A stretch of 64,000 nucleotides of DNA from contig NW_025766936.1 of the NCBI RefSeq assembly GCF_003918875.1, positions 1,054,001-1,118,000 on the forward strand, in the 5' to 3' direction. The DNA is from Haliotis rubra. Lineage: Eukaryota. A model generated the notes under the pieces. That model saw only the letters and a list, made by a program, of their open reading frames with translations. It searched no databases and was not told where the DNA came from. The position numbers were made by a program, and so were the translations under genes. Positions 39,739 to 57,700 of this stretch are shown here, one piece after another (positions within the stretch are counted from its first letter, which is position 1; each line of letters opens with the position of its first letter).

Positions 39739-42700
39739 TCAGTCGATGAATGTCTGGGTCTGTGACTTGCCACACTTCCACATAGCATTAAGTAGTTTGA
39801 TGAGGCCGGTGTCCTTGGGTTTCTCCAGGCCCCGCATCACACGCTGCTTCATCACTGACACAAACTCCTTGTTACTCAGCTGGCCATCGTCTGGGTGGAA
39901 CAGGAAGGGAGTAAGTATGGTATAATGGTAATTATTGCAATTTTCTAGCAATTTCACACTGAGGGCACAAGAAGTGCGCTTTGCATATTGTGCCTGTAAT
40001 ATCATGCTGGCCCCAAAATGACCTACACCGACAATCAGAAAATTAGGATAGTAGTCCTGTCCAATTCAACAAGGAAATATGTGACTGCTTAATTTTCACA
40101 CATTTAACATTTATTGTCATTACAAATATGTTTAAAAAAAAGAACATAACGGGGAATCAAACATTAACACCTCTATTGTATGGCTGACATATTTTGGCTC
40201 GGCCAAAGCAGATTCAAGTTGTGTGTTCTATAGATAGTTGCCTGTGAAGTGGACTGACAATGTCATAGTGTGATGACAATCAAATACAGGGTCGCGGCAC
40301 TGACTTGTCATAACACGTTCAGTTACTTTTATCAATACATCTGTATCTTAAAATATATGCTCTCATACAAGTACGTAAATGTCCGCTTGTGTTTCTCATG
40401 CTCACAAGAATATGACCTCTTTACTTAACTAGTGCATTAGAACGTAGTTACTTGTACAGAGAGACATAGCTGTACAGGACTATAGTGAATAGCCTTGGGT
40501 AAAGTAGACATTGACTTCTTACTGTTTTCATCGAAAAGTGTGAAGACAACATCGATGACGTGATCGGACAGCTCAACATGGGCCACGGTGCGGGCAACAT
40601 GGCGAAATGTCTCTGAAAATGACAGAAATCAACATATATCTCATGTATTTCACAGACATTTGTCTCTTAATGCTGTACTCCTGACGGTGCTCTGTATATA
40701 CTGGAGCAGACAATCCAGTGATTGATATTATGAGTAATGATCCCCAATCTGGGTACAATGACATGCAATCAAGTCACTGATCAACCAACCCTTTACAATC
40801 ACTTCTAACAACCTGCGGGGAGGTGGGGTAGCCTAGTGGTTAAAGCGTTCGCTCGTCACACAGAAGATCCAGGTTCGATTCCCCGCGTGGGTATAATGTG
40901 TTAAGCCCATTTCTGGTGTCCCCCGCCGTGATATTGCTGGAATATTGCTAAAAGCGGCATAAAACTAAACTCACTCACTCACTCCAACAACCTGTACAGG
41001 CTACCAGTTCTAGTGAGTGAGTGAATGAGTGAGTATGGCTAGGCTACCACTAGGCTACACAGGCCCTCGTGTCTTTGTGAAGATTAAAGATGTTAAGAAA
41101 ACATAAAACATTTGAGATGAGATAAAGGTACACCGAAGTGCCCGGCCCTGTCATAATGTATAGTATTGTGTAGCATTTCGAGTCGGGGGTCAACTGAAAA
41201 AATATCTTTAATCTTCGCAAAGACTGTGCTAGGCTACCCAAAAGCCCTGCTACCAGTTCTAACACAGATCCCCACTGTTTACTTCATGGATGGAAAATAT
41301 GAATATACTTAGAAAACACCCTGATCAGATGAGAAACAAAGATAGATGTGTTTCAGTCTGACACAACAGGGCTGCAACTGGATTGAGCAGTGGACATCTA
41401 CAGTGTAAATAACAGTAGAATACCAATAAATACACCTACAATAATTAGAGGTTTCAAATAGATTTGATAAATGTAAAAAGTGGAAGGTGTGCTGATAAGT
41501 ACAATCATGGATAAAAGATTTTACCATGAATTTGTGAAATACTCAATTCTGATTAATCTTTGTGGCGTTCTAAAGGAGACAAACATCTTCAATGAAGAGC
41601 CATACAACCTTTAGATTCAACCATGATGAATATAACATCCTAATTGTATTTAACATAATTAAATCTACAGATACACTGAAAATTTTGTTCCTCATTGATA
41701 CCCCTCAAGCATCAGTCAGAATGCAGTAAACTAAATATTCCATGGCAAACTGGAAGATACATACCCATATCAATGGAGACACCCGCAAGGTGGTAGAAGC
41801 TGAGGGCGGTGTCCACGTCGTTGATGCTCTTCAGGAACAGCCAGAACGCTGTATACTCACTAAATCCAATACCCTGAAACAGCCAGATCACTGTTTACTT
41901 AATAAATGTGATACTACAAATCAGCCGGAATGCTGTGCACTTACTAAATCCTGTACCCTGAAACAGCCAAAAGGCCGTGTACTGACTACTCCCAATACCT
42001 GGGAACAACCAGAAGGCCTTGTACTGACTACTCCCAATACCTGGGAACAACCAGAAGGCCTTGTACTGACTACACCCAATACCTGGGAACAACCAGAAGG
42101 CCTTGTACTGACTACACCCAATACCCAGGAACAGCCAGAAGGCCTTGTACTGACTACACCCAATACCTGGGAACAACCAGAAGGCCTTGTACTGACTACA
42201 CCCAATACCCTGAAACAGCCAAAAGGCCGTGTACTGACTACACCCAATACCTGGGAACAACCAGAAGGCCTTGTACTGACTACACCCAATACCCAGGAAC
42301 AACCAGAAGGCCTTGTACTGACTACACCCAATACCCAGGAACAGCCAGAAGGCCTTGTACTAACTACACTCAATACCTGGGAACAACCAGAAGGCCTTGT
42401 ACTGACTACACCCAATACCTGGGAACAACCAGAAGGCCTTGTACTGACTACACCCAATACCTGGGAACAACCAGAAGGCCTTGTACTGACTACACCCAAT
42501 ACCTGGGAACTGCCAGAAGGCCTTGTACTGACTACACCCAATACCTGGGAACAGCCAGAAGGCTGTGTACTGACTACACCCAATACCCAGGAACAGCCAG
42601 AAGGCCTTGTACTGACTACACCCAATACCTGGGAACAGCCAGAAGGCCGTGTACTGACTACACCCGATACCCAGGAACAGCCAGAAGGCCGTGTACTGAC

Positions 42701-45700
42701 TACACCCAATACCTGGGAACTGCCAGAAGGCCTTGTACTGACTACACCCAATACCCAGGAACAGCCGGGAGGCCTTGTACTGACTACACCCAATACCTGG
42801 GAACAGCCAGAAGGCCTTGTACTGACTACACCCAATACCCAGGAATAGCCAGAAGGCCGTGTACTGACTACACCCAATACCTGGGAACAACCAGGCCGTG
42901 TACTGACTACACCCAATACCCAGGAACAACCAGAAGGCCGTGTACTGACTACACCCAATACCCAGGAACAGCCAGAAGGCCGTGTACTGATTACACTCAA
43001 TACCTGGAAACAGCCAGAAGGCCGTGTACTGACTACACTCAATACCCAGGAACAGTCAGAAGGCCATGTACTGACTACACTCAATACCCAGGTACAACCA
43101 GAAAGCCTTGTACTGACTACACCCAATACCCAGGAACAGCCAGGAGGCCTTGTACTGACTACACCCAATACCTGGGAACAACCAGGCCGTGTACTGACTA
43201 CACCCAATACCCAGGAACAACCAGAAGGCCTTGTACTGACTACACCCAATACCCAGGAACAGCCAGAAGGCCGTGTACTGATTACACTCAATACCTGGGA
43301 ACAGCCAGAAGGCCGTGTACTGACTACACTCAATACCCAGGAACAGTCAGAAGGCCGTGTACTGACTACACTCAATACCCAGGTACAACCAGAAAGCCTT
43401 GTACTGACTACACCCAATACCCAGGAACAGCCAGGAGGCCTTGTACTGACTACACCCAATACCTGGGAACAGCCAGAAGGCCTTGTACTGACTACACCCA
43501 ATACCCAGGAACAACCAGAAGGCCTTGTACTGACTACACCCAATACCCAGGAACAGCCAGAAGGCCGTGTACTGATTACACTCAATACCTTGGAACAGCC
43601 AGAAGGCTGTGTACTGACTACACTCAATACCTGGGAACTGCCAGAAGGCCGTGTACTGACTACACCCAATACCTGGGAACTGCCAGAAGGCCGTGTACTG
43701 ACTACACCCAATACCCAGGAACAGCCAGAAGGCCTTGTACTGACTACACCCAATACCAAAGAACAGCCAGAAGGCTGTGTACTGACTACACCCAATACCA
43801 AAGAACAGCCAGAATGCCTTGTACTGACTACACCCAATACCCAGTAACTGCCAGAATGCCATATACTGACTACACCCCATACCCAGGAACAACCAGAAGG
43901 CTGTGTACTGACTACACTCAATACCCAGGTACAACCTGAAGGCCGTGTACTGACTACACCCCATACCCAGGAACAGCCAGAAGGCCTTGTACTGACTACA
44001 CTCAATACCCAGGTACAACCAGAAGGCCTTGTACTGACTACACCCAATACCTGGCAACAGCCAGAAGGCCTTGTACTGACTACACCCAATACCCAGGAAC
44101 AACCAGAAGGCCGTGTACTGACTACACTCAATACCCAGGTACAACCAGAAGGCCGTGTACTGACTACACCCAATACCTGGCAACAGCCAGAAGGCCGTGT
44201 ACTGACTACACTCAATACCCAGGAACAGCCAGAAGGCCTTGTACTGACTACACCCAATACCTGGGAACAACCAGAAGGCCGTGTACTGACTACACCCCAT
44301 ACCCAGGAACAGCCAGAAGGCCTTGTACTGACTACACCCAATACCAAAGAACAGCCAGAAGGCTGTGTACTGACTACACCCAATACCAAGGTACAACCAG
44401 AAGGCTGTGTACTGACTACACCCAATACCTGGGAACTGCCAGAAGGCTGTGTACTGACTACACCCAATACCTGGGAACTGCCAGAAGGCCGTGTACTGAC
44501 TACACCCAATACCCAGGAACAGCCAGAAGGCCTTGTACTGACTACACCCAATACCAAAGAACAGCCAGAAGGCTGTGTACTGACTACACCCAATACCAAA
44601 GAACAGCCAGAATGCCTTGTACTGACTACACCCAATACCCAGTAACTGCCAGAATGCCATATACTGACTACACCCCATACCCAGGAACAACCAGAAAGCC
44701 TTGTACTGACTACACCCAATACCCTGAAACAACCAAACACTGTGTACTTAAATTCCTCCCCACCACCAAGATTAAATGAACAGGTCAAACCCAACCACAA
44801 GGGTTCCCATTACTCACCCTTGGGTTTTCCTTGAACTTCTTCTTCACTCTCTTCAACATGCGTAGTTTTTTCTTCTCTGGCATTCCAGCATATGTGATGA
44901 GGACATTGCCGAAGTCTTTCTCTGATATCGTGTCATCATCCTGCTTGTAGCGATTGAACTGAAACAGTCATTTAAGGAGCCTCATGACATCAAAATGAAC
45001 AGTACATGGAACACAATTGCCTTGCCTTCAAATGTATAATCGCCATTCAATGCATTCCTGTCAAATTATCCATCATTATTTAAATCCATAACAAGGACAG
45101 GGGAGACAACCTACCTCTATCTTGAGGATCTCTGTCTGGAGCTGTCTCTGGAAGTCAAGGAAACCTTGCACAGTCAACTTTTTCTTGCTGTCCACACCAA
45201 AGAAGTAGGTGAGGAGTGAAGAACTCATGCCCTTGTTGACACTGCCAGTGTTGGCATGGTCTCGGTGCCGCATCCCGATCGATGTCTGACTCTGTACCAC
45301 ATCGTGTACCTGCACACACACAGAGGGGCAAATACAATATACCCACAGTAGCCCCAGGATACATTTGTCAGTTTATCACAATGTTTAATTACTGGCCCTT
45401 GATTTGCTGTACCAACCAAGGATACACCAACACATGGGAATGGGCAAGGGAGGCAACTCATATTCCCTACAAACCATAGAAACAGCTAGTTTCAGAGGGC
45501 TTGCTTCGACCATCCTCCCCCCTGTGTTTTGAGCACAGATATCGTCATCCATTTGTGTCAAGATCGTTTAGTTGAGAGTCAAAATCGGGTTTCAATTGAC
45601 TTGCAGAAATAACAATAAAGAATTGGTAGGTTTCATGATAGGTGATCAATAGGCCTATCATCCATGATTATGTTCACATTAAGCTTTAATTGATTGCATG

Positions 45701-48700
45701 CGACGGTAGCGTAGCGATCGGCAAAGCAGGCGGGTGGGGTATACCGAAGTGTCCGGCCTTGTCATAATGTATCGTACTGTGAAGCATTTCGAGTCGGGGG
45801 TCATCTCAAATGTTTTACATTTTTTTTAACATCTTTAATCCTCGCAAAGACACGAGGGCCTGTGGTTTCAAAGGACATAAAGACATTCATTTTCTCTTAG
45901 AAGCTCAAACTGGGGCAGGTTTGTAACTTGCTTTCTGATCGGTATGCTGGACCCAGCAATATAACCAATCAAAGTGGCAGATGGAAATCAAGGGCAGACA
46001 ATTTGAGATTGTGTGAGAACCACGGGAATGGATCCAGGTTTTCATGCAGATGTACCAAAATGTTTGCCCTGGAGATATAGTTGATAGTATACCGTCTCAA
46101 CATGAACCCTTCCCTTAAAACCCTTCAGAGCTGAGAGGAAACGTGGGATTTCCCTGTAATGTGTCTTCAGATGGTGACTCTTGTAACAGCTAGCATTGTT
46201 ACTGGGCCATAACAGGAACCCCATCCGTATATTGTAGTCAACATGTGCTACGGTTTTTTGTGTTTGGTGCAGATTGGTCTGTTGTTCAGTCATTGGAGAG
46301 TTGCGACGTTTGTTCCTAAGTAACCTACCTACAAACACATTATCTTTTCTTAAATTATGAGCAGAAGTATACAGTAATCGATGACATTGAAATGATAGTC
46401 TGACCACCTTACCTTCTGGAATTCTGTGTATTCAACTTCCCCGTCACCATTTAGGTCAAACATTCGAAATCCAATCTCAAAGTTGCGAGGAGGTGCTATA
46501 AATAGATGTACCACACTGAAAATACTGTGAATCCAAACAAGCTCTTAGTAACAAGGCAAGTATACACAGAGCAATGTCAACAGTTTAACAATCGAGATGG
46601 TCACCTCGAGATGGTGGCTATCCAATAAGATGGCAGACCACCACACAAAATAGTTGACCTACAAACAAGATAGCTGAGTAATGGATAAGATAGATGACAA
46701 ATAGACAAGATGGCTGACTAATGGTCGACTGGTTTGTTGTTTTAAGCCACATTCAGCAATTATCCATCTATATGGCGACAGTCCGTAAATAATCGAGTCT
46801 GGACCAAACAACCCAGTGATCAACAGCATGAGTTGCAATCTACACACTTGGGATACGATGACATATGTCGGCCAAGTCAGTGAGCCTGACCACCCGATCC
46901 CAATACTCGCCTCTTACGACAAGCATGGGTTGCTCAAGACCAATTCTAATCCGGATCTTCCCAGGTTGGATGACTAATGGACAAGATGGACGGCAAAGAC
47001 AAGATGGATGACTTACTTGACAACACTGTGAGGAGGAAGATATAGTCAGAGAAGGAGATGAGGCCTGTCTGCCCCAGCCTGTAGAAGATGCTGTCGTGAC
47101 TCACTTCACACATGTCATCTAACTTCTCCCGCTGTAACATGTCACCACCAGGTTTTCAGTTAATGTGCGTCTGCTGCCCTCACTTTGACTACACTAGTAC
47201 ACTAATGCTAGCAGAACCTGCTGCCCAGAAACTATGGGAATGATGGACGCCAAATGAACAATGGTGTCTACATGTCCAATCATTGAACAAATGCTAAAAA
47301 ATATTATTGATGATTTCTTTAAGCAGTGAAACTAAACTGATAATTGTTCTATGCTAAACATGCTAATATGGTTAAATGTTGTCTTCAAAGCACTTAAAGT
47401 ATGACAATGTTAAACTGTTATCTGACATTATTACAACACAAAAATATAATATTAACTCCTTTTTTTTAAAAAAGCTAGAAGTAAATAATTGATCATTGAG
47501 CATAAATATTACTGTTATGCTGTTAAGAAGGTCAGTCAAATGTAATAATGGACAGCAGGGATCCGGAATCAAGCTTGTCTGATGAGCGACAAACCACACC
47601 ATCTACTACAACAATACACGTCGCCATCACTACACCTCAGCAGACAAGGCTGACTCGGGTCCCTGCCTGTCATTGGGGGGTCAGTTTCTCTCATCAAGCT
47701 CATCATATATACTGAACAAAAAAATTACAGATCATGAATATGTTTTGGATGATTTTTGTAGTAAAGACCAAGCAGACAATTTCATAAAAGTCCCAACGAT
47801 GTTTATGATCCTGACATGTTTTTGTTAAGTGTACACGACAAATTTTAATATAGCATCTACATAACAGAAGATGAACAGTTTCTATGGACACTAAATGGAC
47901 ACAACTGTTTCCGTGTCATCAATATAACAAAGTCACACAGTGGAAATGTCCAAAACGAAAGATATTAGTTTCAAAACACAATAATATGACTGAAAAAAGA
48001 ACTTAAAAAACTACAACACCACATCTAGACTAATAATTCAGTCAAAATAAACACATTACACACACTAAATGAGCACAGGAAAGACTTGTAACTGTTCCAG
48101 TGACAGAAATGAAAACACAAAGATTGTAAAGAGAAAATACGGGGGATGAGGTCGCCATTTTGAATACTCTCTAAATGATGTGTTTCACGATTCTTCGAAG
48201 TTGCACAAACGCTCCTCTACCAAATCAGGTAAACTTCACTGAGTACTAGGATTCAGATAGGAGCACACGCTTCACTGAAGACCATTCTACACCCTTTATT
48301 GCTCAAAAAGAAAGTTACAGGAAAATAATTTCAGTCTGGTAAACAGATAATTAACAGTAATTTCATGCATAATTGTTAGAGCCATGGGAACCACAACATA
48401 TTTTCCCATGAAATGACTTATTGAGAATTAACAGTATCAAGATGGCCGTTCCTCATGCCCAGCTTCCCGCAACACAACAGAACAGGAACATGTTTAGAAG
48501 CCCTACTTCGGTTCGGAAGGGGTATTGTACCCTTGTACCCTTGTACCTTGTAAGTCACTTGTGGAGGTTTGGGAGGGATATTGTACCCTTGTACCTTGTA
48601 AGTCACTTGTGGAGGTTTGGGAGGGGTATTGTACCCTTGTACCTTGTAAGTCACTTGTGGAGGTTTGGAAGGGATATTGTACCCTTGTACCTTGTAAGTC

Positions 48701-51700
48701 ACTTGTGGAGGTTTGGGAGGGATATTGTACCCTTGTACCTTGTAAGTCACTTGTGGAGGTTTGGGAGGGGTATTGTACCCTTGTACCTTGTAAGTCACTT
48801 GTGGAGGTTTGGAAGGGATATTGTACCCTTGTACCTTGTAAGTCACTTGTGGAGGTTTGGGAGGGATATTGTACCCTTGTACCTTGTAAGTCACTTGTGG
48901 AGGTTTTGGGAGGGTATTGTACCCTTGTACCTTGTAAGTCACTTGTGGAGGTTTGGGAGGGATATTGTACCCTTGTACCTTGTAAGTCACTTGTTGAGGT
49001 TTGGGAGGGATATTGTACCCTTGTACCTTGTAAGTCACTTGTGGAGGTTTGGGAGGGGTATTGTACCCTTGTACCTTGTAAGTCACTTGTGGAGGTTTGG
49101 GAGGGGTATTGTACCCTTGTACCTTGTAAGTCACTTGTGGAGGTTTGGGAGGGGTATTGTACCCTTGTACCTTGTAAGTCACTTGTGGAGGTTTGGGAGG
49201 GATATTGTACCCTTGTACCTTGTAAGTCATTTGTGGAGGTTTGGGAGGGGTATTGAACCCTTGTACCTTGTAAGTCACTTGTGGAGGTCACTTCTTGCTA
49301 TAACTGTTACCGATCGATCATCAATTTAGGTACTGTCAACTGGAGCAACTAATTTGCAAATAGCATGATACACTATCTCTACATCAAGAGTAAATGATCT
49401 CTGAACTCAACCGAAGACCTGAAAATCCTCTGTCCATAATCCTCTGTTTGTTCAGTGTGAGCTGATATATTTCAATATGACAGATACACCATGCTGCTAC
49501 AATGTGTAGAACAAAGCACTGATGAAACTCAAGTGAATCAAAGCAGTTGTTGTTAACAGTGACTGCTGGTACACAAAAAGTTACCTCAGTTTGACATATA
49601 AACTCATAATAAAATGACTGAATCATCTTAAATCTAATATATCTAAATTTACAGTAAGCAGGTACTTTTCTTAACTTCTGTAGCTCAGCACAATGTTACA
49701 GTCACATGTGTGGGCTAATGGTGCTACGTCAGATGCATGTGCCGAGTGTATATATCTGATATTGCACCTTCAGGCAGGGAATATGCAGTGGTGAGGGTTG
49801 AAAGATATGTTTATACACTTGTTACTAGTTGTGAAGCTTAATGATTGTGATCAAATCAGTCAAGTGTTTTTAAGGATAATACAAAATGGGTATAAAGATG
49901 CTACTATTGTATCCAACATGGCATAAAAACTAGCACAGCTACTTCCAAAGCTGGTTGCATTCTCACAAACATATCCAAGCATCTACAGTATGTATCATAT
50001 ATCAGAAGTCAAAAGGTGCATTTCAATACATGTATAACACTGGGGAACAAAGGGTTTCTGTACAACACAATAGCTGTGGTTAAAGATGGTGAATGTGCCA
50101 CACGTAAAGATGGCAGACGACAGCGCCATGCGGCGTTCACGCAGACAGGCTGCTGTAAACCAGGCCATAGAGTCTCATATGCACAGTCTGACAGGTAGGC
50201 AAACAGACATACAGATAGGCAGTCTGACAGATAGGCAGATAGGCAGTCTGACAGATAGGCAAACAGACATACAGATAGGCAGTCTGACAGATAGGCAAAC
50301 AGACATACAGATAGGCAGTCTGATAGATAGGCAGACTGACAGGTGAGCAGACAGCAGATGATGGTGACTCAGCATAAGGGTATAGTCAGCAAATCTTTAA
50401 GATGAAAGACTGCCTGGAAAATTGGGCTGCTTCCCTTGGTCAGATTCCCACAATGACAAAAACAATGCATGTAGAGAACCTGGTTATTAAATAGTATGAC
50501 AGCATGAAAAGGTTGAGTCAAGATTGAGAAAGTAATTATTATTGGTGACGGAACAGCAACAATGACGTTCCATTATGGTGATGTCACCTGGCATGGTCTA
50601 ATTAGGTATACATCCCTGAAACAGCATCTGGCCTTATGTAACTATGGCAACCTGAAGCACTGTATACCATGGAAACATACATCATTCAGCTGCACCAAGA
50701 GGGTCAGGTGTGGACATTCTCCAGCTGCCAGCACTCTCCCTGCAGGGAGGCCATCACAAGTTGCACACACTGTCTCCAGCTGGGGAACAAAAACATCCAG
50801 GTCGGTCTTCAGTGGAAGCTCCTATTGGGCCCAACGTATATATTGTTTGGTTGGTTAGGGTTATGCCAACAGGAAGAGGTGAAACCAAGACGGGTTTGAA
50901 AAACACACCTGACATACTACTGTCCAGGACAACATAGTCGTGGTGTCCGTGAATACATTAAGGCATACTCAGAGACATAAACAGGGGTGATGCCTGCAAT
51001 GTATGTCCAGACGGAGGGTAAACGCTTCCTGTGCACATATTGCTCTAAGGGGTTGTGAAACCACGAGTCACCCCCTCAAAATGTCACGTGATACACGAGT
51101 GTCATTCAATAAGGGTTTTGTAGAACGGAACTACTGTCAATCAGTGTGCCCATCATCACCATTACATAGATATCGTGTGACATAACTCAGCACACTGTTG
51201 GATACACCTTGCAGCATGTATGGGAGTAGTGCCTGGCTCCTTGCACAGGTGTGACCCAGCCATGTTTGCTGGTCCAGTAATAAGAAACAGGTTGCCATCC
51301 CTTGGTGGTGTATCAGTTACTGAGCCAGCTGTCAGCTAATTAGCTGATCCGTTTTACTACAGACAATAAAATGGGGACAACTAACACCAGCAAGAAAAAA
51401 GTCACTATTCGAAAAATTGAGGCAAAAACAATGACAATAAATATCAAATATCACTACTACGATTGAGAAAGATGGAGAAAATGGAAAAACAGGCAAGAAA
51501 CATGATTGTCCAAGTTGAAAAGTGTAAACATGCATAAAGACATTTCAATTTCTCTTACAGTTGCCATTCAAAGTAGGACTGAGAAAATGAGCCAACTACA
51601 ACAAGGAGCCATTCCCTACCACTCGGTGCCCTCTAAGACCTGTGACTTGATGCTCTATATGACAGCGGGAGAACCTTGCGAATATCCTGACGTTAAATAT

Positions 51701-54700
51701 ACCTGCGAGTCACAGCATCATTCATTCATATCCAGCAGTCAGGAGCTTACTATACAAAAGCCAGTTGTCTTCTAACATGCAGGACTGATTCTAGAATAAG
51801 CAGACCCATAGCCAGCTGAAGGTTCTGTCCTCTTGACATTAACTACTTTACTGAGATCAAACTGTTATATTTTCACACATACTTGATGGCTCCACTAACA
51901 GGCAGCCAAGCAAATTAGATTCATGTTCTTCAAATGGACTTTATGATAACCTCTTATGCAGAGAGACAATAATAAGTTACACCAGTGGTATTAACACGTC
52001 TCCTCCTACTGTGCAAGCCTGCTGGTGATAACGTTAACCCTAGTCCACAAATATGGGTTCATGGAGGCTTTGTGGAAAGGTTGGAGTAACTACAGGGTCA
52101 TGTAGCGCCATAGAAAGTATTCACAATCACGTTTGATGCTGTGTAGAACATGACCATCTGCCTTAGTACTGATCTATCTATAGTATGTATACAGTATGCC
52201 AGAAGTTTCTTTCATGTTTATTCTCCCGCTTATTAATAATATTCCCGCCTCATTACAAAAGGGCCAGACAGACCTGTGACTACAGAAAAGAGCCACATCC
52301 TATGCCGGTCAGTGAGTCTAACCACCAGATCCCCACAGTGGCTGCACAGGATCAGCACAGGATCAGCATAGGTAACAGGGAACCAGTACTTACTTAGAAC
52401 CCTACCTGGATCAGTAACACAGGACATCTGAGACCAGGTCACTACAAAGACTCTGAATCAGCTGACCTGCCTTTACTTAGACGAGCCCCGTCTCCCCATC
52501 TCTACTGCTTCATGTACTACACAGTACACATGTACTACACACAGCGTTTGTTTGCTATACAACCCCAACATCAAGCTTGCCAGAAGAGTATCAAAGTCGT
52601 TTTGTATTTGAGCTGCTTCTTCAGTAAATATTCAGTAAATGTACCTGTTGTGAATAATCTAAATTTTGAATCTAACAATTGAATAGGGGCAGTATTTCCT
52701 GTAGAAGCAATATCCTAGAACTAAAGTCCTGGTTGTCACAACATACAGAAGTAAGTAGTCAAGGTTCATTAACAATAACAAATTTGTTTCAGTCACAAGA
52801 TTTTATCAATCAATAAAACCATCTGAATAAAATTTGAAAACTAGTATTCAACTCAACTTAAAACTAAAACACAGGAAGGGGGCATAACAGGCCATATCAA
52901 CCTAAGAATGGAGAAATACGTAGAAATTGTTCTAAAGAAATGCACTGCCATGCAGAAAGGAGAGAGACACTCTAGAAATGTTAGTAGGGCATCAGCAGCA
53001 GCAGCAAAGGAGAGGAAGAGGCGCACTCACCATCTCAAACAGGTTATCCTTCTACGTTCAATACAAAAACAGCCATTCATTAGATGCGTATCTTATACTA
53101 CACAAATACATATCAGCAGTTAGGCGGGGGAAGCCGCTTTCAACAGTATTTCAGTTACAAGCTGTCAGTTTGTGTGGGAGACAAAGGTGATGCAGGCCCT
53201 AGTCAATTACCACGTTGGTGCATCTCACAGGCATGGTACTGACTGACCTGGATCTGGCCTGCTAGCTAAGGGAACTAACTCTGTATAGTCAGTGAATCTA
53301 CAGATCACTTTCATCACCTTCCATTGACATTACACGTTATTAATTTTTGCAATAAATCTATTCACTGAACCGTCATTCTTGAAAAAAACCCATAGCATAG
53401 TGTTTGTTTTTTAAATTAAACTTGACTGCCACTTCTAAACAGATTCCCTAAGCTACTAAAACTGGTCATTTCAGGACAAGGAAACAATGGGTGTGACACA
53501 ATGGGTGAATTGACAATAAAAACATAGCATACATTTCCTTCTCTACTGGTAGTCTGGCTCTGGAACAAAAACATCATATTTATTGTGCTCGTGACCATAG
53601 TTGCCATGTTTAAGTGTGCATGTACATGATTCCTTCACTGTTACCACGTTTCAATGACTCCCCAATCATCCAGTGCATTACGTCTCCAGTCCATTCATGT
53701 TAATTTTGAGAAAAATTTAATGAGCTTCAGATAACTGTACATCAAATTACAGATATCAGCAAAATATTCTGAGCTCATGTATAAAACAGATAAAGTTGGA
53801 ATTTTACTACCGAGCTGCTGACAAATTGTGAATAATCATATAGAATGGAGATATAAAACACTTAATATCAAGGGTGATGTAAATGTTATTTCTTCCCCAT
53901 TTATCAGAATGACCAGAAGATGCTTTGCTAACCAGTATTAAACTCAGAGAGTAAGAAAATTGAGATTTCCCGATGACAGAAAAGCTTGAAGCCTCCCTGT
54001 AGCCGAGATGGTGCACGTTCCCCTTCATCATTACATCATTAGTTCTACATGAACATCTCTACGGTTAGATCCAGGACTAATCAATGGTTTACACAACATG
54101 TAAGAGGCTGCTTTCATTATTTGGTTTATAGATAAAAAGCAAATCCACTGGGTCCGCAATTGCAAAATAAATACAAATTTAAAAATATTCAAATGATTCT
54201 CAGGGTTTTTTGGAAAGCAAAATCAAAAGGGCTTTATCTCCAGTCCTGTATCAAACTAACTTGGGAGAGTGTGCTATCAACAGTTTTCAAAAATCTGAAC
54301 ATCAGGTTAAATTCAGATTAATTTGAAATAAATCTAGAAATATTTAAATTTTGCAAAATGTTGGTAGATCTATAAACCAATCACAAAAAAGCTTTGCCTC
54401 CTTTTACTTTAAGTAATATATTGTTATTAATTACAATATGCAGCCACTGTCTTGTTCCACAAAGCATATCAGCATACTGCATACACAGCACACTGTAGCT
54501 TCGTATGTTACCATCCCGTGCAGGCCTCACATACCACAGGCACTTAGTGATCAGTTCAGATATACTCTAGAAAATCATTCACTTGTGTTCATGTTCTCAT
54601 TTTGTGAATAAACAATCATAGAAACAGCTTTACCAATTATCTAAATACATGCCAGTCATATTATGAAACTAGAAACAGCTTTACCCAATATCTAAATACA

Positions 54701-57700
54701 TGCCAGTCACATTATGAAACTAGACATTTTGTGGCATGGCCGTAAGCATTTTGTTTAAACATTTTGTAAACCCACAGCTGAACCTTGAACGTAAATGACT
54801 TGACAGGGAAGAACACCATGAAGAGCCAGAACAAATCCTTGTCAGGCCCGATCCATTAAGTATTTGTAGCTACAACAGTTGTAAGTCAATTTCCAAACTT
54901 ACAAGAGTCATAGTATTAATACTTCTGGATCAGGACCATGAAAACAAGGATTTTAAACTATATAAAACACAGCTGGTGTATCCACAAACAAGCAGGAAGT
55001 ACCAGACATGTTCCCACTTTTAGACTACGTCTGAATGTTCCTGCTACATGACACTTGTCTTGGCTTACAATCAGTTTGTTCAATCTATAGCAGCAGCCCA
55101 GAGATTACAGATAGTGAATCTCCGACATTGTTGTCTTGGTCAGAAGTCAGTGTAGCTACACGTAATATGATAAAGATACTTGCATCTATTCAAATGCCAG
55201 AATTCAAAAGTTTTGCAATTTTGCAAATCGTGGATAGAGACCACAGAAGACATTCAATTCAAGACATGACCTGACTTCTACTTTGCCATAAATTAAATCA
55301 GTTGGAGGAATGACGAATTTCACAACATGACTGTACAATAGACATACCCAAACTTCCTGATAAAGAAATATTTTATGTGAATAAATTAATTCTATTATGC
55401 ACAGTGACAGCATGATAAGTTATATGAGTACTGCTACATGTATTTGTGACAGTAAATAGTTCTATGTGTGGACTGATGTTTGCTATGAGATATACTACAG
55501 TTGGTTATCAAGCATGTTTACTATTCTACAGGAGTCAAACTCATCTAGTATGTCTAGATTTCTAAAGTTGCACAAACATTTTCACACATTTATAAAAACT
55601 GACTTCATTTCACATATTTTTAGATCTGTGATTCATATTTTCTGAAGTTAAACTGTTAATGTCTAACTCAATGAATGTCCAATTCAATTAAAGTTTTCGT
55701 TTAAATTATTCATATGATTTACTGAATTATATTTATGAATTGTGATGAAAGTACCGCAGCAACAAGCTCCACCTACCTTAGGGTCGAACTTCCTAAACTG
55801 GTCGAGTCCGAGGCCTGTAAACACCAGACACACAATGGAGAAACAAAGGAATACAGAATCGGGATCACTTCATAGGTTTCAAGACGTTTCAATCCAAGAT
55901 CAGTTACTACTTGACAAGGAATCATAATAAAACACACACTGAATACAGGCCAGATAGGACAATCTATACAATACACCCATCTGGATAAACGTATCAATGT
56001 ATTGTATTGTATAAGCCAGTTCATATGTTACAGAAACTGTCACACACAGTTTCCTAACACCCAAAAGTCTAGTGATAGTACATGATACACATGTACACAC
56101 TAATATATGCTGTGCTGATAAGAATGTGTACATATTTTACCCATGTGGGGAATCGAACCCGGGTCTTCAGCGTGACGAGCAGACGCTTTAACCATTAGGC
56201 TACCCCCCACCAACAAACATGAGGTACAGGGGATCTATTACCAGTCACAAGGCACCACTGTGTATGTTGTGTATTACACTGTTACCAGTTACAAGGCACC
56301 ACTGTGTATGTTGTGTATTACACTGTTACCAGGTACAAGGCACCACTGTGTATGTTGTATATTACCCTGTTACCAGTTACAAGGCACCACTGTGTATGTT
56401 GTATATTACACTGTTACCAGTTACAAGGCACCACTGTGTATGTTATGTATTACACTGTTGTATATGTTGTGTACACTGTAACCAGTTACAAGTTACAAGT
56501 TACAAGGCACCACTGTGTATGTTGTATATTACACTGTTACCAGTAACAAGGCACCACTGTGTATGTTGTATATTACACTGTTACCAGTTACAAGGCACCA
56601 CTGTGTATGTTGTATATTACACTGTTACCAGTTACAAGGCACCACTGTGTATGTTGTATATTACACTGTTACCAGTTACAAGGCACCACTGTGTATGTTG
56701 TATATTACACTGTTACCAGGTACAAGGCACCACTGTGTATAGTCAGTGACGCAGAAATGGTCCTCCTCCGACCTACCTTCGGGCTGTTTGATCCCAGGCG
56801 TGATCGAACGCACAAAATCCTCTGGGGTCATGAACACTTCCCACACGCCAGAATTAATCTGCACCTTCAGGGTGGCAAAGTACCGGAAAATCTTGTCCGG
56901 GGTTGAGTAGGCTCGGATTCTGTCTTCATACCCAATGATCTGATCAACAAAAGATTATTATCTTAAGTCAGACAATTTAGCCCACAGGTGAACTGTGTTC
57001 TCTTTCATTGAAAGAGTACAGTATAGATGATAATTTGAAAGAGACACTGTCCAGTTTGTGTCCAGGTACAAATCAAATACATGACGTGTGACAGTTTTGT
57101 AAGTTTTTGAGTGTAATTCTCCATGTTCCTTGTGGCCCTGCTAACAGTTAGGCTCTAATACTCTGTGATTACCTTGCATGATTCATTACTCAAGACACAG
57201 GCTTGCTAGACAACTTTATCTGACATCTTGTAAAGTTGTTTTAAACCAAAAACACTCATTCCCACCTTCCGGTCTCTGAAGCCGATCTTCTTCTTCTTGG
57301 TCTTCTTGCCTTCGTCATCGTGCTCGACGGCCTCACTGGACTGCCCCTCCACAGCAGCAGCATCCACCTTCAACCACTTTGCCAGCATCGTCATTCTGAA
57401 ACAATGTCCCAGCAGCTGTTACATACATAGTTCTATGTATGTAGTTGTGGTAAAGTAGGACAGCTTTAAACTGTTTCAGTGGTGTCCCTGTCATATCCTG
57501 GGATGATGGCCTGGGCTTATGTAAAAGAACAACGAAAACCAAGGCCTACTTCCACCTATAGGGATGCTTGCAAGTGTATTCATGAGTGAGCACTTAGAGT
57601 AAACCTCCTATGTGACATGTTCCTAACTTGTCAAAGTGTACAACATAGGCCACAGACTTCAGACAAGAAACTGTACATGTTGCCTTGATGTTAGACAATG

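What the first reader, a model, noticed from the sequence alone, without database searches (positions are those of the whole stretch)
51883..51894. Candidate 12-nt MICU1 microexon (WSHQ) in the intron that hosts the vertebrate MICU1.1 microexon
Seen (sense strand): ...atCTAATttgcttggctgcctgttag|TGG AGC CAT CAA|gtatgt. It is in phase 0 like the flanking exons (...FDPK| and |REKL...), has a branch-point-like CTAAT, UGC motifs next to the 3' splice site, and downstream TGCATG at 51776-51781 and 51529-51534. Known: mammalian muscle MICU1.1 inserts a 4-residue microexon (EFWQ) after the equivalent ...FDGK exon and changes Ca2+ uptake; UGC near the acceptor marks SRRM4/eMIC-dependent microexons; downstream UGCAUG is an Rbfox enhancer. 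This 8.6-kb intron is the longest in the gene. Inference: an ancient or convergent tissue-specific switch of the calcium uniporter gatekeeper in an invertebrate.
Basis: partly seen in the sequence, partly recalled or inferred. Interest (0 to 1): 0.75.

Follow-up and report, generated by a model that had tools for sequence, protein, structure and literature searches.

The report
Unsupported MICU1 microexon; real ones nearby
The proposed 12-base "WSHQ" exon in the abalone MICU1 gene looks like a chance splice-site pair that related abalones do not keep. The same intron holds two real, conserved and already annotated microexons at the spot where mammals insert the muscle/brain MICU1.1 exon.

Summary
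The letters are exactly as described: minus strand, AG|TGGAGCCATCAA|GTATGT at 51894-51883, in the 8,645-nt phase-0 intron between the FDPK and REKL exons of MICU1. The window matches Haliotis rubra. The exon itself fails every test I could run.

- **Isoforms:** RefSeq isoforms of four Haliotis species never contain WSHQ.
- **H. asinina:** the orthologous AG..GT stretch is 20 nt, so the frame is broken by an 8-nt indel.
- **H. rufescens and H. cracherodii:** the acceptor and exon are absent.
- **Conservation:** it lies at the 38th percentile of the intron. It is one of 247 of 400 in-frame AG..GT decoys kept in none of the three other species.
- **RNA:** contigs from one study fit the direct FDPK|REKL junction.

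The intron does hold two real cassette microexons: 27 nt (SQTTSREGN, 53559-53533) and 21 nt (KDNLFEM, 53051-53031). Both are 98-100% conserved and give RefSeq isoforms X1-X4. One lies 77 nt downstream of the 21-nt exon.

The proposed exon does not.

The parts
51883..51894 (-). Proposed 12-nt WSHQ microexon; judged a chance pseudo-exon
   Evidence: Sequence read. Not conserved: 20 nt in H. asinina, absent in H. rufescens and H. cracherodii. Keeps AG/GT/frame in 0 of 3 species. Absent from all isoforms.
47132..55776 (-). 8,645-nt phase-0 MICU1 intron between the FDPK and REKL exons; positional equivalent of the vertebrate exon 5/6 intron
   Evidence: Orthologous introns are 9,249-11,854 nt in three other Haliotis species.
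55777..55815 (-). Upstream constitutive exon encoding [13 protein letters not shown]
   Evidence: tblastn of H. rubra XP_046573429 gives 100% identity.
47017..47131 (-). Downstream constitutive exon encoding [38 protein letters not shown]
   Evidence: RNA contigs join 46495 to 47017 and run to 47133.
53533..53559 (-). Real 27-nt cassette microexon (SQTTSREGN), ttccag|...|gtatgc
   Evidence: Sequence. Present in RefSeq isoforms X1/X2 of H. rubra, H. rufescens and H. cracherodii, and X1 of H. asinina. Conserved with splice sites in 4 species, with one synonymous ACT>ACC change. The 40-nt window 53558-53519, covering most of the exon and its donor, is 98% conserved.
53031..53051 (-). Real 21-nt cassette microexon (KDNLFEM), acgtag|...|gtgagt
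   Evidence: Sequence. Present in isoforms X1/X3 (H. asinina X1/X2). Exon plus flanks are 100% identical in 4 species, the most conserved 40-nt window of the intron. Similar 21-nt KD..L exons occur in Patella, Mytilus and Pecten.
52949..52954 (-). Conserved TGCATG 77 nt downstream of the 21-nt microexon; candidate Rbfox site
   Evidence: (+67 to +77 in all four Haliotis).
51776..51781 (-).
   Evidence: Conserved in all four species although the pseudo-exon is not.
51529..51534 (-).

Best explanation
The 12-nt WSHQ 'exon' is a chance AG...GT pair (a pseudo-exon) in an unconstrained stretch of the long MICU1 intron of Haliotis rubra. It is not a regulated microexon.

The real alternative splicing of this intron uses two other cassette microexons, 1.1-1.7 kb upstream in the sense direction. 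One is 27 nt (SQTTSREGN, 53559-53533) and the other 21 nt (KDNLFEM, 53051-53031). Independent inclusion of each gives four isoforms that differ by 0, 7, 9 or 16 residues in the loop after FDPK. That is the site where mammalian MICU1.1 inserts EFWQ.

The following steps are inferred, not shown. Inclusion is tissue-regulated. The conserved UGCAUG motifs act as Rbfox-type enhancers: one 77 nt downstream of the 21-nt exon and two further downstream. The inserts tune the Ca2+ threshold of the uniporter as EFWQ does in mammals.
For: - **Species:** the window is H. rubra MICU1, with the main exons 96-100% identical to XP_046573429 and E=7.7e-143 to solved human MICU1.
- **Isoforms:** RefSeq sets of four Haliotis species show only [SQTTSREGN] and [KDNLFEM] between FDPK and REKL. 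H. rubra has X1 575, X2 568, X3 566 and X4 559 aa, with no +4 form. WSHQ is absent from all 419 related proteins checked for it.
- **Orthologous DNA:** H. asinina has AG|20 nt|GT, so an 8-nt indel breaks the frame. H. rufescens and H. cracherodii have no acceptor or exon there.
- **Conservation scan:** the candidate window scores 0.67, the 38th percentile. The two real microexons score 1.00 and 0.98, among the top four windows.
- **Decoy test:** of 400 in-frame AG..GT candidates, WSHQ is among the 247 that keep AG/GT/frame in none of the three other species.
- **RNA contigs:** in three samples they run from the REKL exon two letters into 'AG'. That matches ...CCTAAG (skipping) and not ...ATCAA.
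- **TGCATG:** 3 of 4 hexamers are fully conserved against an 11% background (P=0.005).
- **Other genomes:** every annotated microexon sought in the fetched Patella, Mytilus, Pecten and Lineus loci was found as an AG..GT cassette in the homologous intron.
Against: - **Absence is not proven.** RNA data were four small runs from one study, held only as contigs. Tissues are unknown.
- **Annotation limits.** RefSeq pipelines can miss 12-nt exons, although they did-12-nt ones in Gigantopelta, Biomphalaria, Mytilus and Procambarus.
- **Favourable local features.** The candidate ranks 5th of 247 by splice-site score, has two UGC next to its acceptor (5% of AGs), and has a UGCAUG about 100 nt downstream.
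- **A young exon is possible.** A lineage-specific exon in H. rubra would by definition show no conservation.
- **Regulation is untested.** Tissue regulation, Rbfox binding and any Ca2+ effect of the real microexons were not tested here.
Confidence: 0.88

Rival explanations
1. WSHQ is a young, lineage-specific microexon of H. rubra or close relatives. It would be used at low level or only in a tissue not sampled, such as ganglia or muscle. It would have arisen when an 8-nt difference from the H. asinina state produced a 12-nt in-frame AG..GT unit next to pre-existing UGC and UGCAUG motifs.
For: It is in frame in H. rubra, with usable splice sites ranking 5th of 247. Two UGC lie within 25 nt of the acceptor, and a conserved UGCAUG lies about 100 nt downstream. 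The intron clearly supports microexon splicing. The RNA evidence available was thin.
Against: No H. rubra RefSeq isoform has it, while both neighbouring microexons were called. RNA contigs fit skipping. There is no constraint on the exon in three congeners. The absolute splice-site scores are weak. The downstream UGCAUG is conserved where the exon does not exist, so this exon does not explain it.
Confidence: 0.05
2. The AG..GT unit is a non-coding splicing element: a decoy, a recursive-splicing intermediate or a poison exon. It would help process the 8.6-kb intron or lower MICU1 output rather than add WSHQ to the protein.
For: In H. asinina the unit is 20 nt and would shift the frame, as poison exons do. 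The acceptor region and donor are identical in H. rubra and H. asinina.
Against: The unit is absent in H. rufescens and H. cracherodii. Local identity between H. rubra and H. asinina (85%) is only slightly above that pair's intron background of 78-81%. There is no transcript evidence.
Confidence: 0.03

Closest known systems
Mammalian MICU1.1 exon 5' (12 nt, EFWQ; RBFOX2-driven; skeletal muscle and brain)
   Same: Same gene family. The same phase-0 junction after FD[GP]K, in the loop before the first EF-hand lobe. The same length (12 nt), and UGCAUG downstream.
   Different: The WSHQ unit has no transcript or isoform support and is not conserved even within Haliotis. EFWQ/DFWQ is reported as highly conserved (PMC8909990) and appears in isoforms from fish, coelacanth, frog, birds and mammals. 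WSHQ shares only the final Q in register.
RefSeq-annotated Haliotis MICU1 isoforms X1-X4 (27-nt SQTTSREGN and 21-nt KDNLFEM cassettes)
   Same: Same intron, strand and phase.
   Different: They lie at 53559-53533 and 53051-53031, not 51894-51883. They are 98-100% conserved with their splice sites in four species. They are already in public annotation.
Intronic pseudo-exons (chance splice-site pairs in long introns)
   Same: AG and GT at a short in-frame distance with moderate flanks. It is one of hundreds in this intron: 247 of 3-30 nt and 400 of 3-60 nt. There is no conservation and no transcripts.
   Different: It ranks near the top of the decoys and sits near conserved UGCAUG motifs, which is why it drew attention.
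SRRM3/4 (eMIC)-dependent neural microexons; zebrafish micu1 microexons respond to srrm3 eMIC loss (PMC13281805)
   Same: UGC motifs lie close to the 3' splice site. The host gene is a known eMIC target in a vertebrate.
   Different: Dependence on an eMIC factor cannot be tested here. The two real Haliotis microexons have no UGC in the 25 nt upstream of their acceptors.

Membership tests
MICU1 (mitochondrial calcium uptake protein 1) gene | Full-length similarity to solved MICU1, with EF-hand domains | tested here: met
   H. rubra X1 against human MICU1 chains gives E=7.7e-143. The main window exons are 96-100% identical to H. rubra XP_046573429. EF-hand Pfam hits are listed.
Expressed cassette microexon | AG and GT flanks, length a multiple of 3, no stop codon | tested here: met
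   This holds in H. rubra only.
Expressed cassette microexon | Transcript or isoform evidence for inclusion | tested here: not met
   No +4 isoform in four Haliotis RefSeq sets. RNA contigs fit the FDPK|REKL junction. No Haliotis transcript fragments are in the protein collection. Raw reads from defined tissues were not available, so low-level use is not excluded.
Expressed cassette microexon | Splice sites and reading frame kept in related species | tested here: not met
   20 nt in H. asinina, absent in H. rufescens and H. cracherodii. Kept in 0 of 3 species. 38th percentile of intron conservation.
Orthologue of vertebrate MICU1.1 exon 5' (EFWQ) | Lies in the phase-0 intron directly after FD[GP]K | tested here: met
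   Vertebrate isoforms insert DFWQ(TE) after FDGK or YDGK.
Orthologue of vertebrate MICU1.1 exon 5' (EFWQ) | [DE]FWQ-like peptide conserved across species | tested here: not met
   WSHQ shares only the final Q in register. It is not conserved within the genus.
Orthologue of vertebrate MICU1.1 exon 5' (EFWQ) | Muscle/brain-specific inclusion and raised Ca2+ sensitivity | not testable with these tools
   Needs tissue RNA and functional assays.
SRRM3/4 (eMIC)-dependent microexon | UGC motif close to the 3' splice site | tested here: met
   Two TGC within 25 nt upstream of the AG. This is true of 25 of 498 AGs in the intron.
SRRM3/4 (eMIC)-dependent microexon | Inclusion depends on an eMIC-domain factor in neurons | not testable with these tools
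   No perturbation or tissue data were available.
Rbfox-enhanced exon | UGCAUG within a few hundred nt downstream, conserved together with the exon | tested here: inconclusive
   The motif is present about 100 nt downstream and conserved in four species. It is also conserved where the exon is absent, so it cannot be assigned to this exon.

The most novel reading that the evidence does not exclude
The junction after FD[GP]K of MICU1 may be an ancestral bilaterian site of regulated microexon insertion. Under this reading the molluscan 21-nt K-D-x-[LIF]-x-x-[LMW] exon (Haliotis KDNLFEM) shares an origin with vertebrate exon 5' ([DE]FWQ), under Rbfox-type control through conserved downstream UGCAUG. 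Similar exons occur in Patella, Biomphalaria, Mytilus, pectinids and caenogastropods. Aromatic or acidic microexons also occur in a nemertean (DELDDW) and in Daphnia (LLSFNDFQ). No paper in the held library describes this, although the isoforms are in RefSeq.
Probability: 0.3. Interest if true: 0.55.

Novelty: not a real feature. Interest (0 to 1): 0.2.

Why it matters
If WSHQ were real, it would be an invertebrate counterpart of the MICU1.1 switch that sets the Ca2+ threshold of the mitochondrial uniporter in mammalian muscle and brain. It is not supported, so the proposed exon has little value in itself.

The useful outcome is a correction. The same junction carries annotated alternative microexons across molluscs, a nemertean, crustaceans, an insect and vertebrates.

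That makes the origin of the MICU1.1-type switch directly testable. Whether it is ancient or convergent can be addressed with tissue RNA-seq and minigenes in invertebrates.

Tried and rejected
- **Splice-site scoring:** a crude matrix with frequencies from memory ranked the candidate 5th of 247. It could not separate real exons from decoys. The real 27-nt exon scored lower than WSHQ.
- **Sequencing runs:** only four small 'RNA?' runs from one study and three DNA-like runs were found, all held as contigs.
- **Laying reads:** a 12-nt piece cannot be shown. Only the two-letter overhang at 47132-47133 was informative, and the loose-end letters at that place were not listed.
- **Protein word search:** it cannot take a spliced model by reference, so the large representative search was run with one exon to obtain full-length MICU1 ids.
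- **Search with a 111-residue piece across the junction:** this was aimed at Haliotis transcript fragments. The best hit was 69% identical, so it was uninformative.
- **Literature:** no paper in the held library combined MICU1 with mollusc terms.
- **Rejected ideas:** that conservation of the two cited TGCATG motifs supports the WSHQ exon, because they are conserved where the exon is absent. Also that WSHQ resembles EFWQ, because only the final Q is in register.
- **Deuterostome invertebrates:** not reached, because the hit lists filled up with other taxa.

Full report
**Observation**

On the minus strand the window reads ...atCTAATttgcttggctgcctgttag|TGGAGCCATCAA|gtatgt, with the 12 nt at 51894-51883. 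The upstream exon ends ...TTCGACCCTAAG|gtaggt at 55777 ([13 protein letters not shown]). The downstream exon begins acag|CGGGAGAAG at 47131 ([14 protein letters not shown]...). Both junctions are phase 0. The intron is 8,645 nt and is the largest gap between mapped exons. TGCATG occurs at 51781-51776 and 51534-51529. The description is therefore accurate.

**Is it more than chance?**

I scored the sites with a crude splice-site matrix whose frequencies I recalled from memory. The intron holds 247 in-frame, stop-free AG..GT pairs of 3-30 nt. The candidate ranks 5th by summed score, with weak absolute scores of 0.9 and 1.9 bits.

- Two TGC within 25 nt upstream of an AG occurs at 25 of 498 AGs.
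- Two or more TGCATG in a 400-nt window occurs in 1.8% of windows.

These features look favourable together, but they were chosen after the fact. Two other entries in the same decoy list turned out to be the real exons.

**Identity of the gene and species**

One exon (window 56939-56775) was searched against protein representatives. A full-length hit was then used for the word search. The REKL exon peptide is identical to Haliotis rubra MICU1. tblastn of XP_046573429 (P0166) onto the window gives 96-100% identity for the main exons. H. rubra isoform X1 matches solved human MICU1 at E=7.7e-143, and the alignment opens its gap exactly after ...FDGK. Mammalian MICU1.1 inserts EFWQ after residue 181 and is driven by RBFOX2 (PMC8909990). 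Zebrafish micu1 microexons are mis-spliced when the srrm3 eMIC domain is lost (PMC13281805).

**What the annotation shows**

RefSeq isoforms of H. rubra, H. asinina, H. rufescens and H. cracherodii differ at this junction by only two cassettes:

FDPK|[SQTTSREGN]|[KDNLFEM]|REKL

In H. rubra the isoforms are X1 575 aa (both cassettes), X2 568 (+9), X3 566 (+7) and X4 559 (neither). No +4 form exists in any of the four species. WSHQ occurs in none of the 419 related proteins checked for it.

Both cassettes are in the window:

- **27-nt exon:** ttccag|AGCCAG...GGAAAT|gtatgc at 53559-53533.
- **21-nt exon:** acgtag|AAGGAT...GAGATG|gtgagt at 53051-53031.

**Orthologous DNA**

The MICU1 loci of H. 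rufescens (L001), H. asinina (L002) and H. cracherodii (L003) were fetched, and the introns align at about 70-82%.

- **H. asinina:** the candidate is AG|TGGAGCTACTACTATATCAA|GT, which is 20 nt. An 8-nt indel sits inside the 'exon' and breaks the frame.
- **H. rufescens and H. cracherodii:** neither blastn with short words nor a global alignment finds the acceptor or the exon.

A four-species alignment of the whole intron was used for a conservation scan.

- The candidate window 51915-51876 scores 0.67, the 38th percentile.
- The most conserved 40-nt window of the intron is the 21-nt exon with its acceptor (1.00).
- The 27-nt exon with its donor scores 0.98. Its only change is a synonymous ACT>ACC.

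I also ran a systematic test. Of 400 in-frame AG..GT candidates of 3-60 nt, 41 keep AG, GT, frame and openness in all three other species. These include both real exons with identical peptides. The WSHQ candidate is among the 247 that keep them in none.

**RNA**

Only four small runs guessed to be RNA, all from one study, and three DNA-like runs hold this locus. All are kept as contigs. They were laid on 46300-52000.

- Contigs in three samples (depth 29-35) join 46495 to 47017 and then run to 47133. That is two letters past the exon edge.
- Those two letters read 'AG' on the sense strand. This fits an upstream ...CCTAAG (the direct FDPK|REKL junction). It does not fit ...ATCAA (WSHQ), ...GAAAT or ...AGATG.
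- One low-depth contig (4.5) covers 51893-51540 unspliced across the proposed donor, as pre-mRNA or DNA would.

This is weak evidence. Searches for Haliotis transcript-derived proteins found nothing beyond the RefSeq sets.

**The TGCATG motifs**

Three of the four TGCATG hexamers in the intron are fully conserved in all four species, against 11% of hexamers overall (P=0.005).

They are conserved in the species that lack the WSHQ unit, so that unit does not explain them.
- The third (52954-52949) lies 77 nt downstream of the 21-nt exon, and at +67 to +77 in all four Haliotis. Patella has one at +151.

An Rbfox-type enhancer role for the real microexons is an inference from position, conservation and the mammalian precedent.

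**Wider picture**

The same junction carries annotated alternative microexons in many animals:

| Taxon | Inserts |
|---|---|
| Patella | KDSIPIW; a 39-nt exon |
| Biomphalaria | KDSLDDL; DETK |
| Mytilus | KDDFRTL; MSKMKK; DPRV |
| Pecten | KDDVHSL; a 42-nt exon; GSK |
| Babylonia, Littorina | KDSLKDL, KESLKDL |
| Chiton | KDTLS |
| Octopus | (K)DSL; NPRTSK; DMSTELVEGLE |
| Nemertean (Lineus) | DIMTQ; DELDDW |
| Daphnia | TMTQ; LLSFNDFQ |
| Decapods | SAEE |
| Moth (Helicoverpa) | a 45-nt insert |
| Vertebrates | DFWQ; TE |

In the fetched loci of Patella, Mytilus, Pecten and Lineus, each annotated microexon I looked for is an AG..GT cassette in the homologous intron. The 21-nt K-D-type exon has a similar tag|AAGGA-type acceptor and GTGAGT/GTAAGT donor. 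Whether these exons share an origin with vertebrate [DE]FWQ is open. A search that paired MICU1 with mollusc and splicing terms returned no paper mentioning MICU1 among those listed.

**Verdict**

- The sequence is as described, but the WSHQ unit is best explained as a chance pseudo-exon (confidence about 0.88).
- A young, H. rubra-specific, low-level exon cannot be excluded without tissue RNA (about 0.05).
The exons that carry it out are 1.1-1.7 kb away in the same intron and already annotated.

Noticed in passing
window 53424-53463 (minus strand): A 40-nt block between the two real microexons is 97-100% identical in the three other Haliotis species (mean 0.99). It contains an AG|CTTAGGGAATCT|GT unit (LRES, 12 nt) kept in all four, but with a weak GTTTAG donor. 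It could be a splicing regulatory element or an unannotated microexon.
   Followed up: partly
window 55495-55534, 50005-50115, 52850-52889, 48460-48499 (minus strand): Further intronic blocks are 97-99% conserved across four Haliotis species, against an intron-wide identity of 63-72% over H. rubra positions. Their function is unknown.
   Followed up: no
window 48421-49297: Tandem repeat inside the MICU1 intron, read as long open frames of a repeated unit. One contig of run X1 skips 720 nt (48536 to 49257), which suggests copy-number variation of the array.
   Followed up: partly
window 46682-47063: Contig depth summed to thousands in all four RNA-like runs, with many partial and rearranged matches. 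This suggests a highly repeated, expressed element in the intron just downstream of the REKL exon.
   Followed up: no
window 41765-44817: A 14-residue stretch of MICU1 (residues 451-464 of P0166) matches repeatedly at 42213-42962 in tblastn. A 962-codon open frame of repeats spans 44809-41924.
   Followed up: partly
loci L004-L007 and proteins P0210-P0419: The MICU1 junction after FDP[KQ] carries annotated alternative microexons in many molluscs, a nemertean, Daphnia, decapods and a moth, as it does in vertebrates. The 21-nt K-D-x-[LIF]-x-x-[LMW] exon recurs across gastropods and bivalves.
   Followed up: partly
   Followed up: no
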